Both the position numbers and the translations under genes were made by a program. Below the pieces are notes generated by a model, which was not told the DNA's origin, searched no databases, and worked only from the letters and a program-made list of their open reading frames with translations. From Octopus bimaculoides (taxonomy: Eukaryota): DNA of 43,400 bases. How positions within the stretch are numbered: position 1 is the first letter of the stretch; each line of letters begins with the position of its first letter. The stretch lies in the NCBI RefSeq assembly GCF_001194135.2, contig NC_068985.1:30319588-30362987 (forward strand), written 5' to 3'. Shown in pieces: positions 23,903 through 32,608 of the stretch.

Positions 23903-23979
23903 ATGGACCAGTTTAAAAGATATTCAACTCTAGCACAGAATTACCTTGCTTTGTCACCCGAACTGTCAAGATATTTCAT
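23903..23979 (+). CDS. C18orf21: C18orf21/RMP24 coding exon 1
   Basis: MDQFKRYSTLAQNYLALSPELSRYF+AT, donor gtaagc (phase 2). In-frame TGA upstream at 23813. The P-x-x-SRY motif resembles human P-G-Q-ARY. Confidence 0.75.
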
Positions 23980-26430
23980 GTAAGCATTCGTTACTTTAAC
24001 CTCTCCCACTGTACAAGCAATACATTCTCATCTCGTTCCTTTAATTATGCAGCTCTATAGATTTCCCTCAAACGAATCGACCCCAGTACTTATTTGTATA
24101 AGCCTGGAACTTATTCTATCTTCTCTTTTTCCGAATTGCTAAGTTACTGAAATGTAAACTAATCAACACATTGTCAAGATGTGGTGGTGGACAAACACAA
24201 AGACACATATGCTTGTGTGTAAGCAAGCTAAGAATCCATAATTTAGGAAAAAATATGCACTCTTATATCTGTCAAAAAAGTGAGTATATTAATTGAAGTG
24301 TAATTGTATTATATATCCATTATAACTGATCTTAATTGGTTTCACACTAGGCATTCAACAGTGTCAGGTAACAGTCTGATTATGTAACCCTGCACTCTTC
24401 AGAGATGGCAGTTATGGAATAAAATATGGCGACTGCTCTCTATTGTTTGAGGAGAATGCCTAGTGCAAAACCGATTTGTAAGATCAGCTGTAATGGATAT
24501 ATAATGGTGCACACTCCAATTAATATGAATATATATGTGTGTGTATGTATATATATACTATTGAACCTTGGGAAGAGCATTATGCCGGTAATAATAAACA
24601 CATGCACTGGTTCGGTCCTTTATTGTTATTGTTCGTGTTATAGTATTTCAATTGTATTTCTTTCAACACACGAATTCACATAAAGTTTAACATTTTAGTT
24701 TAAACCATAACTTCGATTAGATTAGTTAATTTAGTTCTTTTTAGTGTATTTACTTATTAAATTATATATATTTATATACCTACAAATGTCGAGACTCACA
24801 GAGCAGATGACAGAGGATTGAAACTTCTGGCTGTTTACTGTGCTTGAGAGGACTTACCAAGCTAAGTAAAGGCATGGTTGTCCTTGCATACAGGCTTGTG
24901 CTTTGCAGCCCTCTCCAGCTGAACATTCTTAATCTTGTGGGCTCATGTGTGCTGGTGCCATATAAAAGCACCCAGTACACTCTGTGAATTGGTTGGCATT
25001 AGTGAGGGCATCAAGCTGTAGAAACTATGCCAAACCAGACATGGAGCCTGGTCAGATCCTGTCAAACTGTCCAACCCATGCCAGCATGGAAAAACAGACC
25101 TTAAATGATGGTGATGATATATGACTGGCCTCTTTCAGTTTCTGTCTTCCAGATCCACTCACAAGTCTTTAGACAGCCTGAGGCTATGGCTTAATTGTTT
25201 CCTTTCTATCTTCTTCAGGTTCAAGGCTTTAAAGAATAAATCAGATGAAGGTAAGTTTATTTACTTTTAAATATAGAAATATTATTTCACTTGTTTGTTT
25301 ATTGAAATAATTATCACTATTATTATTTACTTTATCACAGTGTATCCAGGAATATATTAATTCTTGATAACTAATGTACATGAAAACCCATCCTCTATTC
25401 TCTGGGGTCACATTCATGCTTAACTCAGCATTGACTGCTTGTTATGAAATTTTAGAAATATCAATGGAAAGCCGCTGTTGTGTTATTATTAAGGCGGTGA
25501 GCTGGCAGAATCATTAACACACCAGATGAAATGCTTAGCGGTATTTCGCCTGTCGCTATGTTCTGAGTTCAAATTCTGCTGAGGTCAACTTTGCCTTTCA
25601 TCCTTTCAGAGTGGTTAAATTAAGTACCAGTGAAACACTGGGATCAATGTAATTGACTAGTCCCCTCTCCACGAATTTCAGGTCCTGTGCTTTTAGTAGA
25701 AATTATTATTATTATTAAGGTAGCGAGGTAGCAGAATTGTTAGCACACTAGATGAAATCCTTAGCAGTATTTTGCCCATCGTTACATTCTGAGTTCAAAT
25801 TCCATCGATTTTACCTTTCAGTCTTTCAGGGTCAATAAAATAAGTACCAGTTGAACACTGGGGTTGATGCAATCAACTCATTCCATTCCCCAAAATTGTT
25901 GCCCTTGTGGGAAAATGTGAAACCATCATTATCATTATTATTGCTATTAAGGTGGCAAACTGGCAGAATTGTTAACACGCCAGGCAAAATGCTTAGCTGT
26001 ATTTTGTCTGCCGCTACGTTCTGAATCAAATCCAAGGTCGATAAGTTAAGTACCAGTGAAACACTGGAGGTGATGTAATCAACTAGTCTCCTCCCATAAA
26101 ATTTCAGGCCTTGTGCCTATGAGTAGAAAGGATTATTATTATTATTATTATTAAGGGGGTGAGGTGGCAGAATTGTTGGCATGCCGGTCAAAATGCTTAG
26201 TGGCGTTTTGTCTGTCTTCATGTTTTGAGTTTAAATTCCACCAAGGTTGACTTTGCCTTTCATCTTTTTTGGGGTTGATAAAATATATACCAGATGAATT
26301 TTGGGGTCGATGTAATTTACTTACCCACTCCCCTCAAACATGCTGGTCTTGTGCCAAAGTTTGAAATTATCATTATTATTATTATTAAAGTGGTGATCTG
26401 GCAGAATCATTAGAATTTTATCAGCTTAAA

Positions 26431-31700: not shown

Positions 31701-32608
31701 TGACCGCTCTTCTCCCCAGTTTTGTGAACTTACACCAATTTTAGAAATCATTTATATATTGGATAACAAATATTAGAGACACACCCTGGGTTTGATTTAA
31801 CCAACCATACCTTACGTTATGCATATACTTGTGCCACAGTAAGAAATCATTAATACTGTGAGGTTTTTGGATATAACTCGGCATTTTCAGTAGATGTCAA
31901 ACAAAATACCATCTGGTATCTATGCAGTCCTTTATGTTCTTAGTTCAAATCCTGCTGAGATCAGTTTTGCCTTTCATCCTTCTGTAGTTAATAAAATAAA
32001 GTGCCAGTCAAGTACTCAAATAACTGGTCATTTTTTTACTTCTAAATTAATAAGAGGTAGGGCATGTCTGACTTTTGCATGACTTTCAAGGTTGGTGAAA
32101 TTGATAGGGGACCTCAATGCCAGCCTCATCGTCTGTGGGTCAATATATGCTGATATGTGGGAGAAATATGGGTAAAGAAAGAATTGGGAGGCTGTCTGAA
32201 AGCTTGCAATGGAATGAATTCTGTTAAACATGCATTTCATAGTGGGTATTGTTCTAAAACATGCGGCTAGCAGTGATTTCCAATTAGTTACTCTGGTTTA
32301 ACTACTTTATTTTGTATGTCTTTAATAACTCTCTACTGTTCGTTTAATTACATGTACTATAAGTTTTAGTTGGGATTTGAAATGTTTGGCTTGAAATTTT
32401 GCTTTTTAGTCAGATTTTGGCATCAAATATAACATGTATTCTTTTTTCTTTTTTTCTCTCAAGTTCGGAAAAGCAACGCAATTCAAAACACAAAAAGACC
32501 AAAAAACAACCATCCTGGAAGGTGAAATGTGAAATGAAAGCACTTTTGAACAAAGAATCTACAGTTTCAAATGATGATTCTTTACTGAACTTTTTGTTGA
32601 ATACTTAA
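23903..32608 (+). CDS. C18orf21: C18orf21/RMP24 orthologue (Rpr2/Rpp21/Snm1-family zinc-ribbon protein, putative RNase MRP-specific subunit); complete spliced CDS, 210 aa
   Basis: join(23903-23979,25219-25250,28391-28581,28922-29024,30092-30176,32464-32608) = 633 nt. All introns are GT-AG, phases are consistent, and the start has good context (cataATGg). Protein: MDQFKRYSTLAQNYLALSPELSRYFMFKALKNKSDEENKCWCQTCGTYYFPNNLKVRLSPKLTLNKHIKSLVKRYKKDPDSLKACQQSLALHYLNGRNKLVLTCQVCHTKKSYKGKKR...MKALLNKESTVSNDDSLLNFLLNT*. The two CxxC pairs, VRLxPK, LxCxxC...GKxR and the terminal L..LL......NFL helix align by eye with human C18orf21 as recalled. Confidence 0.85.
24070..24205 (-). mobile_element. Family 1 SINE tail fragment in RMP24 intron 1
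   Basis: gaatcgaccccagtacttat...cttattctatc...gctaagttac...ttgtcaag matches the inverted tail at 906-1105. Confidence 0.65.
24945..25118 (+). mobile_element. Family 3 SINE/LINE-tail repeat ending in (GAT)n
   Basis: aaaagcaccc..acactc...ggttggcattag..agggcatc.agctgtagaaac...ccaacccatgccagcatggaaa...ttaaatgatg. Related copies at about 28655-28800, 29785-29965, 33330-33490, 37180-37536 and 40480-40560. Confidence 0.7.
25219..25250 (+). CDS. C18orf21: C18orf21/RMP24 coding exon 2 (32 nt)
   Basis: Acceptor ctatcttcttcag, donor AAG|gtaagt. Phases 2/1 bridge exons 1 and 3 exactly: (M)FKALKNKSDE(E). Confidence 0.75.
25491..26432 (+). repeat. Head-to-tail array of about 210-bp tRNA-like SINE units (family 2) separated by (ATT)n: four full units and one partial
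   Basis: Units start at 25491, 25717, 25949, 26153 and 26387 with AAGG(C/T)GG..A.CTGGCAGAAT (A box) and contain GAGTTCAAATTC (B box). Confidence 0.85.
26560..26985 (-). mobile_element. RTE-clade LINE fragment (RT C-terminus)
   Basis: GKLEVVDCFCYL...GGCS, KGLSLRVKDRLYDAC...AMLHGSET.AV...LEASML and LKEKLGIRGVRCGVQERQL, typical of the RTE/BovB post-RT region. Confidence 0.85.
28391..28581 (+). CDS. C18orf21: C18orf21/RMP24 coding exon 3 (first CxxC)
   Basis: Acceptor tcttttgcag, donor TTG|gtgagt. Encodes NKCWCQTCGTYYFPNNLKVRLSPK...NGRNKL. Confidence 0.9.
28922..29024 (+). CDS. C18orf21: C18orf21/RMP24 coding exon 4 (second CxxC)
   Basis: Acceptor ttccattacctgaag, donor GTGG|gtgagt. Encodes VLTCQVCHTKKSYKGKKRLPIKWTTPSNSTDNSV. 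Confidence 0.85.
30092..30176 (+). CDS. C18orf21: C18orf21/RMP24 coding exon 5
   Basis: Long pyrimidine tract plus tttgcag acceptor. Encodes (E)DSKLKKQQLVLEIMSEMKSKKKKASSV. Donor AG|gtgaga keeps frame with exon 6. Confidence 0.75.
30225..30945 (+). repeat. Second head-to-tail cluster of family 2 SINE units
   Basis: Unit heads at about 30330, 30640 and 30875, plus headless 3' parts; all on the + strand. Confidence 0.75.
32464..32608 (+). CDS. C18orf21: C18orf21/RMP24 last coding exon
   Basis: Acceptor ttttttctctcaag. Encodes SEKQRNSKHKKTKKQPSWKVKCEMKALLNKESTVSNDDSLLNFLLNT*, which resembles the recalled human C-terminus (LKMLLSQ...FRNFLSSL). Confidence 0.8.

What the first reader, a model, noticed from the sequence alone, without database searches (positions are those of the whole stretch)
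23903..32608. Complete invertebrate orthologue of C18orf21/RMP24, a recently recognised RNase MRP-specific subunit
Seen: six GT-AG exons splice in frame into a 210-aa basic protein with two CxxC pairs (CQTC, CQVC) and a C-terminal LLNFLL helix. The ORF track shows only disconnected pieces. Known (recalled): C18orf21 was long uncharacterised, is related to RPP21 and yeast Snm1, and was recently reported to distinguish RNase MRP from RNase P. Inference: this is the cephalopod counterpart, probably annotated as uncharacterised, and it supports a dedicated MRP subunit in lophotrochozoans.
Basis: partly seen in the sequence, partly recalled or inferred. Interest (0 to 1): 0.75.

Follow-up and report, generated by a model that had tools for sequence, protein, structure and literature searches.

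The report
Octopus RMP24 (C18orf21) gene, already catalogued
This is a real, expressed six-exon octopus gene for the counterpart of human C18orf21/RMP24, the small zinc-binding protein that marks RNase MRP as distinct from RNase P. It is an ordinary housekeeping gene that public databases already hold and already place in this family.

Summary
Six GT-AG exons (CDS 23903-32608, + strand) splice into a 210-aa protein with pI 9.9. It carries CQTC (42-45), CQVC (104-107) and a C-terminal LLNFLL. RNA contigs and reads from several runs confirm all five introns. The transcript starts near 23356, giving a 547-nt 5'UTR.

The protein passes Pfam PF15719 (DUF4674/'Rmp24-like') at 47 bits against a cut-off of 28.6. 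Its only PDB sequence hit is human C18orf21 from the RNase MRP cryo-EM entries. A family profile seeded on it hits that chain at 6e-35. Human RPP21 shows no pairwise similarity (E 5.7). The predicted fold is Rpr2/Rpp21-like, and it has the central helical insertion that RPP21 lacks.

It is not new. The identical protein is in NCBI as 'uncharacterized protein LOC106872867 [Octopus bimaculoides]' with the Pfam hit precomputed. Oyster, abalone and nemertean relatives are already named 'C18orf21 homolog'. Papers from 2025-2026 state that the family is conserved across metazoans and beyond.

RNase MRP specificity in octopus is inferred by homology. It was not tested here.

The parts
23356..23902 (+). 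5'UTR, the unspliced first part of exon 1. It is 547 nt long and holds 10 upstream ATGs with uORFs of 1-28 codons.
   Evidence: Contigs from two runs both begin at 23356. The X1 contig has sequencing adapter immediately before that position. Raw reads begin around 23370-23400.
23903..23979 (+). Exon 1 coding part (aa 1-25 plus 2 nt). It encodes the first N-terminal helix and the conserved SPELSRYF motif.
   Evidence: The donor GTAAGC is used in reads and contigs.
25219..25250 (+). Exon 2, a 32-nt micro-exon.
   Evidence: RNA depth is confined to 25214-25250. The loose ends on either side read as the end of exon 1 and the start of exon 3.
28391..28581 (+). Exon 3. It encodes the first zinc knuckle CQTC (aa 42-45), the VRLSPK strand and the central helical insertion.
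   Evidence: X1 contig records 679-870 and X2 contig; alignment.
28922..29024 (+). Exon 4. It encodes the second zinc knuckle CQVC (aa 104-107) and the last beta hairpin.
   Evidence: X1 contig records 871-974 lie directly after exon 3. The loose end before 30091 reads as the end of exon 4.
30092..30176 (+). Exon 5. It encodes the start of the lysine-rich tail, with a predicted helix at aa 135-153.
32464..32608 (+). Exon 6 coding part. It encodes the basic tail, the conserved C-terminal LLNFLL motif and the stop codon TAA.
   Evidence: A GT..AG joint 30176>32464 appears in three raw-read runs and in contigs.
32609..32857 (+). 3'UTR, minimum extent. The true poly(A) site was not determined, and the UTR runs into a dispersed repeat.
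   Evidence: The end at 32857 is inferred from the X1 contig length: 1453 nt, with exon 6 starting at record 1060. Read depth continues to 32800. The first AATAAA is at 32968.

Best explanation
This is the Octopus bimaculoides orthologue of C18orf21/RMP24, NCBI gene LOC106872867. By homology, it is the RNase MRP-specific paralogue of RPP21.

The inferred mechanism is as follows. Its two N-terminal helices bind RPP29/POP4. Its four-cysteine zinc ribbon and three-stranded sheet sit between RPP29 and RPP38, at the position RPP21 occupies in RNase P. The basic helical insertion between the two zinc knuckles contacts the specificity-domain stems of the MRP RNA, and would clash with RNase P RNA. This makes the two subunits mutually exclusive. 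The complex then cleaves pre-rRNA in ITS1.

Shown here: the gene structure, its expression, family membership, the predicted fold, and the presence of the insertion and the cysteine ligands. Inferred from human work: the binding partners, RNA specificity and role in rRNA processing.
For: - The gene model was built, and RNA confirms all five introns.
- The protein is 100% identical to NCBI LOC106872867 and has octopod orthologues at 88% and 53% identity.
- Pfam PF15719 scores E=4e-12 and 47 bits against a cut-off of 28.6. The same family is labelled 'Rmp24-like'.
- The only PDB hit by phmmer is 9uh7_K, human C18orf21, with both CxxC pairs aligned.
- An exhaustive HMMER search found 29 representatives. 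All 29 match PF15719. They include proteins that NCBI names C18orf21 homologues in oyster, abalone, a nemertean, a duck and a fish.
- The family profile hits 9uh7_K at E=6.3e-35 over the full length, including the C-terminal FLSSL.
- C42 and C45 are present in 29/29 sequences, C104 in 27/29 and C107 in 26/29. L203, F206 and L207 are kept in most sequences that reach the C-terminus (20-22 of 29).
- The AlphaFold2 model has mean pLDDT 81, and about 90 or above for most of residues 1-120 (dipping to 77 at 31-40). Its order is helix-helix, strand, helix-helix, strand-strand. This matches the published description of human RMP24 residues 1-127 (PMC12819141).
- Foldseek's top hits are archaeal Rpp21, with probability 1.0.
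- hhalign against an RPP21 profile gives 93.4% probability and E=2.5e-7. RPP21 has a gap of about 33 residues opposite octopus residues ~60-92. This is the insertion that the cryo-EM paper describes as RMP24-specific and RNA-contacting (PMC13184271).
Against: - There is no biochemical or genetic evidence from any cephalopod or other lophotrochozoan.
- I could not show a separate octopus RPP21, NEPRO/RMP64 or MRP RNA gene. The one RPP21 search listed only vertebrates, and the window holds no Rfam RNA.
- Identity to human C18orf21 is low. The single-sequence PDB E-value is only 0.004.
- Foldseek did not return the human RNase MRP entry itself. I do not know why.
Confidence: 0.9

Rival explanations
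1. It belongs to the RMP24 family by descent, but in cephalopods it is not RNase MRP-specific. It might be shared between RNase P and MRP, or it might have taken on another nucleolar role.
For: Specificity was never tested outside human and mouse cells. I did not find an octopus RPP21. Human chimeras show that single structural elements can shift RNA preference (PMC12819141), so specificity could be evolutionarily labile.
Against: Every discriminating feature of RMP24 is kept: the central insertion, the basic tail and the C-terminal motif. The cryo-EM paper argues that the insertion would clash with RNase P RNA.
Confidence: 0.07
2. It is the octopus RPP21 orthologue, that is, the RNase P-specific subunit, and has been misread as C18orf21.
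For: It shares the Rpr2/Rpp21 fold. Thirteen of 29 family members also give weak Pfam Rpr2 hits. hhalign gives 93% probability against RPP21.
Against: BLASTP against human RPP21 gives E=5.7. The octopus protein gives no Pfam Rpr2 hit even at E<=10. The family profile hits human C18orf21 at 6e-35, does not hit human RPP21 at E<=10, and hits archaeal Rpp21 only at 5e-5. The spacing between CxxC pairs is 58 residues, against 26 in RPP21.
Confidence: 0.02
3. The gene model is a chance concatenation of ORF fragments, or a decaying pseudogene.
For: The exons are short, one is only 32 nt, and the locus is full of repeats. Expression is low, at a few reads per run sample.
Against: All five junctions appear in independent RNA runs. 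The ORF is intact. Conservation is domain-patterned across three octopods and 29 family representatives.
Confidence: 0.01

Closest known systems
Human C18orf21 / RMP24 (PDB 9uh7 chain K; Pfam PF15719 DUF4674 'Rmp24-like')
   Same: The length is similar (210 aa against 220 aa). The order of elements is the same: an N-terminal helix pair, a CxxC knuckle, a VRLxPK strand, a two-helix insertion, a TCxxC knuckle, a lysine-rich tail and a terminal LxxFLxxL motif. The family profile aligns end to end at E=6e-35.
   Different: In the alignment only about a quarter of the aligned positions are identical. The octopus tail is shorter and richer in lysine. The terminal motif reads LLNFLLNT rather than FLSSL. 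There is no functional evidence for the octopus protein.
Molluscan and other lophotrochozoan 'UPF0711 protein C18orf21 homolog' entries (Magallana gigas XP_011414707, Haliotis cracherodii XP_071089027, Lineus longissimus XP_064641475)
   Same: They belong to the same Pfam family, have the same architecture, and are 22-28% identical to the octopus protein in the alignment.
   Different: NCBI already names them as C18orf21 homologues. The octopus, O. sinensis and Argonauta entries are still called 'uncharacterized protein'. The non-cephalopod proteins have longer tails, at 258-316 aa.
RPP21 / Rpr2 / archaeal Rnp4 (Pfam PF04032), the RNase P subunit
   Same: They share the zinc-ribbon fold with an N-terminal helix pair (Foldseek probability 1.0 to 1x0t, 2zae and 2ki7). 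Profile-profile homology is 93%.
   Different: RPP21 lacks the insertion of about 33 residues between the knuckles and lacks the C-terminal motif. There is no pairwise sequence similarity. In human cells the two are mutually exclusive subunits of different enzymes (PMC12819141, PMC13184271).
Yeast Snm1, the RNase MRP-specific subunit
   Same: Published structural comparisons treat it as the functional and positional counterpart of RMP24 (PMC13184271; bioRxiv 10.1101/2025.02.21.639568).
   Different: No sequence hit to Snm1 was obtained here, even with the family profile at E<=10. The relationship rests on the cited papers, not on my tests.

Membership tests
C18orf21 / RMP24 (Pfam PF15719) | Scores above the curated Pfam gathering threshold | tested here: met
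   47 bits against a cut-off of 28.6, E=4e-12, covering profile positions 4-179 of 190. The hit is precomputed in the public collection.
C18orf21 / RMP24 (Pfam PF15719) | The reciprocal best match among characterised proteins is C18orf21, not RPP21 | tested here: met
   The only PDB phmmer hit is 9uh7_K. The family profile scores 6e-35 against it, and human RPP21 is not hit. BLASTP against RPP21 gives E=5.7.
C18orf21 / RMP24 (Pfam PF15719) | Four cysteine zinc ligands in two CxxC knuckles | tested here: met
   C42, C45, C104 and C107 align with human CPYC and CKTC. They are conserved in 26-29 of 29 sequences. Zinc binding itself was not tested.
C18orf21 / RMP24 (Pfam PF15719) | Central helical insertion between the first and second beta strands, absent from RPP21 and contacting MRP RNA in human | tested here: met
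   Helices 66-77 and 84-94 are predicted with pLDDT above 90. hhalign places an RPP21 gap opposite residues ~60-92. The feature is described in PMC13184271 and PMC12819141.
C18orf21 / RMP24 (Pfam PF15719) | N-terminal helix pair that binds RPP29 | tested here: inconclusive
   Helices 3-13 and 19-32 are predicted with pLDDT around 90. Binding to octopus RPP29 cannot be tested with these tools.
C18orf21 / RMP24 (Pfam PF15719) | Associates with RNase MRP RNA and not RNase P RNA, and is required for ITS1 cleavage | not testable with these tools
   Shown only for human and mouse (PMC12819141, PMC12406990, PMC13184271, bioRxiv 10.1101/2025.02.21.639568).
C18orf21 / RMP24 (Pfam PF15719) | Coexists with a separate RPP21 paralogue in the same genome | not tested
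   The one search with human RPP21 listed only its 120 best hits, all vertebrate. Protein searches were then exhausted, and the octopus genome outside the window was not searchable.
Rpr2 / RPP21 / Snm1 superfamily (Pfam PF04032) | Rpr2-type fold: a helix pair plus a zinc ribbon | tested here: met
   Foldseek ranks 1-3 are archaeal Rpp21 (1x0t, 2zae_B, 2ki7_B), with probability 1.0 and target TM-score 0.56-0.62. hhalign gives 93.4%.
Rpr2 / RPP21 / Snm1 superfamily (Pfam PF04032) | Direct Pfam PF04032 hit | tested here: not met
   No PF04032 hit for the octopus protein at E<=10. Thirteen of its 29 relatives do hit it weakly. The protein is therefore a superfamily relative, not an RPP21-family member.

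The most novel reading that the evidence does not exclude
The terminal LxxFLxxL motif (octopus aa 203-208) is kept from octopus to human in most family sequences that reach the C-terminus. Yet the human cryo-EM study reports that the RMP24 termini are disordered and not visible. Swapping the whole C-terminal domain also leaves RNA specificity unchanged. The motif could therefore be a short linear motif for an undescribed partner, for example in nucleolar targeting, assembly chaperoning or docking onto pre-ribosomes, rather than part of the RNase MRP core. Separately, the 547-nt 5'UTR with 10 upstream ATGs could mean that the subunit is under translational control.
Probability: 0.3. Interest if true: 0.4.

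Novelty: already known. Interest (0 to 1): 0.12.

Why it matters
It matters little beyond annotation. The result lets LOC106872867, and its O. sinensis and Argonauta orthologues, be renamed from 'uncharacterized protein' to RMP24/C18orf21 homologue. It adds cephalopods to the taxa that carry the RNase MRP-specific paralogue of RPP21. This agrees with published statements that the subunit is ancient. It opens no new question by itself. The deep conservation of the C-terminal motif is the only feature that might merit a small follow-up.

Tried and rejected
The likely cause is the (TA)n, (CA)n and (CT)n microsatellites. I used short stretches around each exon instead.
- Word-indexed protein searches with the single protein and with the octopod alignment found only three octopod proteins. 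The exhaustive HMMER search was needed to reach other phyla.
- The look-up of encoding contigs returned only the genome record and no transcript contig.
- The search for an octopus RPP21 using human RPP21 listed only vertebrates.
- Foldseek against PDB did not return 9uh7, human RPP21 or Snm1. It returned only archaeal Rpp21.
- The Rfam scan of the window found nothing.
- Pfam scans of six other long ORFs in the window gave nothing above the cut-offs.
- Other exon-2 candidates from the splice-site scan were rejected, because RNA supports only 25219-25250.
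Full report
**Observation**

I rebuilt the gene from the sequence.
- The ATG is at 23903, and exon 1 ends at 23979 before GTAAGC.
- A splice-site scan for an in-frame exon of the right phase gave 25219-25250 as the best candidate. It has a 17/18 pyrimidine tract and a GTAAGT donor.
- Exons 3 and 4 (28391-28581 and 28922-29024) carry CQTC and CQVC.
- Exon 5 is 30092-30176, and exon 6 is 32464-32608, ending in TAA.
- The six pieces add to 633 nt. They translate without a stop into 210 aa, with pI 9.9 and a mass of 24.4 kDa.

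**RNA evidence**

Public RNA runs from the same species hold the locus. Microsatellites caused refusals on long stretches, so I laid reads exon by exon.

| Junction | Support |
|---|---|
| 23979>25219 | 8 X21 reads, 5 X23 reads and contigs of X1 and X2, whose loose ends read as the start of exon 2 |
| 25250>28391 | 7 X21 reads and both contigs |
| 28581>28922 | 1453-nt X1 contig (records 679-870, then 871-974) |
| 29024>30092 | Loose ends of X1 and X2 contigs |
| 30176>32464 | Called joint with 4, 9 and 3 reads in three runs, plus contigs |

- Two independent contigs start at 23356, one of them with adapter sequence directly before it. The 5'UTR is therefore 547 nt and unspliced.
- One X2 contig reads through the exon 3 donor to 28643, which indicates some unspliced RNA.

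**Identity**

- The spliced protein is 100% identical, over its full length, to NCBI 'uncharacterized protein LOC106872867 [Octopus bimaculoides]'. Orthologues in O. sinensis and Argonauta hians are 88% and 53% identical. All three carry a precomputed PF15719 hit.
- The window is CM046605.1:~30.34 Mb of assembly GCA_001194135.2. There the family is labelled 'Rmp24-like'.
- My own Pfam scan gives PF15719 at E=4e-12 and 47 bits, against a cut-off of 28.6. No Rpr2 hit appears even at E<=10.
- A phmmer search of all PDB chains finds one sequence only. It is human C18orf21 in entries 9uh7, 9uh9 and 9uha, with both CxxC pairs aligned.
- An exhaustive HMMER search of 1.84 billion representatives finds 29 proteins at E<=1e-3. 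All 29 match PF15719, and 13 also weakly match Rpr2.
- Named members include 'UPF0711 protein C18orf21 homolog' from Magallana gigas and M. angulata, Haliotis cracherodii, the nemertean Lineus longissimus, a duck and a fish, plus a Capitella hypothetical protein.
- A profile of this alignment hits human C18orf21 at 6.3e-35 end to end. It hits archaeal RNase P component 4 at 5e-5. It does not hit human RPP21 or yeast Snm1.
- BLASTP of the octopus protein against human RPP21 gives E=5.7. I had checked that RPP21 sequence as identical to 6ahr_K.

**Structure and discriminating features**

AlphaFold2 on the 29-sequence alignment gives mean pLDDT 81, and about 90 or above for most of residues 1-120 (dipping to 77 at 31-40). 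The elements in order are:
- helices 3-13 and 19-32;
- strand 54-59;
- helices 66-77 and 84-94;
- strands 97-104 and 110-117;
- a low-confidence lysine-rich tail with helices at 135-153, 181-194 and 203-209.

- Foldseek against PDB ranks archaeal Rpp21 structures first, with probability 1.0.
- Profile-profile comparison with a vertebrate RPP21 alignment gives 93.4% probability and E=2.5e-7. RPP21 is gapped opposite octopus residues ~60-92.
- That stretch corresponds to the central insertion. The human cryo-EM study says it contacts MRP RNA stems P10 and P12.1, is conserved in RMP24 across eukaryotes, is absent from RPP21, and would clash with RNase P RNA (PMC13184271).
- The four cysteines are conserved in 26-29 of 29 sequences. 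L203, F206 and L207 of the terminal motif are kept in most sequences that reach the C-terminus (20-22 of 29).

**Mechanism (inferred)**

By homology with the human enzyme, the protein should:
- bind RPP29 through its N-terminal helix pair;
- sit between RPP29 and RPP38 in place of RPP21;
- clamp the specificity domain of MRP RNA with its basic insertion.

This would define the RNase MRP particle that cleaves pre-rRNA in ITS1. None of it was tested in octopus. I also could not show a separate octopus RPP21, NEPRO or MRP RNA.

**Novelty**

- Four 2025-2026 papers established C18orf21/RMP24 as the RNase MRP-specific subunit.
- Lophotrochozoan homologues are already named in RefSeq.
- The octopus protein is already deposited with the family domain assigned.

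The finding amounts to a missing product name, not a discovery.

**Verdict**

The gene is already known, and interest is low (0.12). The one mildly open point is the function of the deeply conserved C-terminal LxxFLxxL motif. It is not visible in the human structure and is dispensable for RNA specificity in chimeras.

Noticed in passing
window 23356-23902: The RMP24 mRNA has a long (547 nt) unspliced 5'UTR. It contains 10 upstream ATGs with short uORFs of 1-28 codons. The annotated start ATG at 23903 has A at -3 and G at +4. The O. sinensis model carries a 33-aa N-terminal extension that has no ATG counterpart here.
   Followed up: partly
window 28582-28643: One RNA contig (X2, 569 nt) splices exons 1-2-3 correctly but then reads through the exon 3 donor into intron 3. 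This suggests partly spliced RNA or intron retention.
   Followed up: no
window 28958 and 28546: There are polymorphisms in the RNA. T>C at 28958 (8 of 9 first-mate-on-+ X22 reads, 9 of 10, plus the X1 contig) would change Tyr113 to His just after the second zinc knuckle. C>T at 28546 appears in a few X22 reads.
   Followed up: no
window 25010-25103, 25480-26400, 29705-29974, 30380-30514, 30650-31054: Intronic dispersed repeats appear at depths 10-100 times that of the exons in RNA-seq. Nearly all such reads run on into unlike sequence, so they come from other copies elsewhere in the genome (SINE-like, with a shared 'GGGTTGATAAA...TACCAG' end). The 3'UTR also runs into one near 32730.
   Followed up: no
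window ~35236-43400, minus strand: The downstream neighbour is a convergently oriented gene. Its 547-aa product carries PALP and CBS domains, so it resembles cystathionine beta-synthase. It runs beyond the fetched locus.
   Followed up: partly
window 27547-27861 and 28208-28552, minus strand: Two minus-strand ORFs in intron 2 share a similar C-terminal peptide (…W D(R/Q)S(S/G)TRQ(E/G)(F/L)WII…). The second ORF overlaps exon 3. This indicates two copies of one repeat element. Pfam finds no family for them.
   Followed up: partly
window 3325-16103: Seven runs of N (152-778 nt) mark assembly gaps. They are flanked by long (TA)n, (CA)n and (TATG)n microsatellites. The block at 16241-16669 is a long trinucleotide-type low-complexity run with GC skew of 0.6. 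No called gene lies within 10 kb upstream of the RMP24 gene.
   Followed up: no
window 19228-19509, plus strand: A 93-aa ORF gives weak helix-turn-helix hits below the Pfam cut-offs (HTH_23, E=1e-3). It may be a remnant of the N-terminus of a Tc1/mariner-type transposase.
   Followed up: partly
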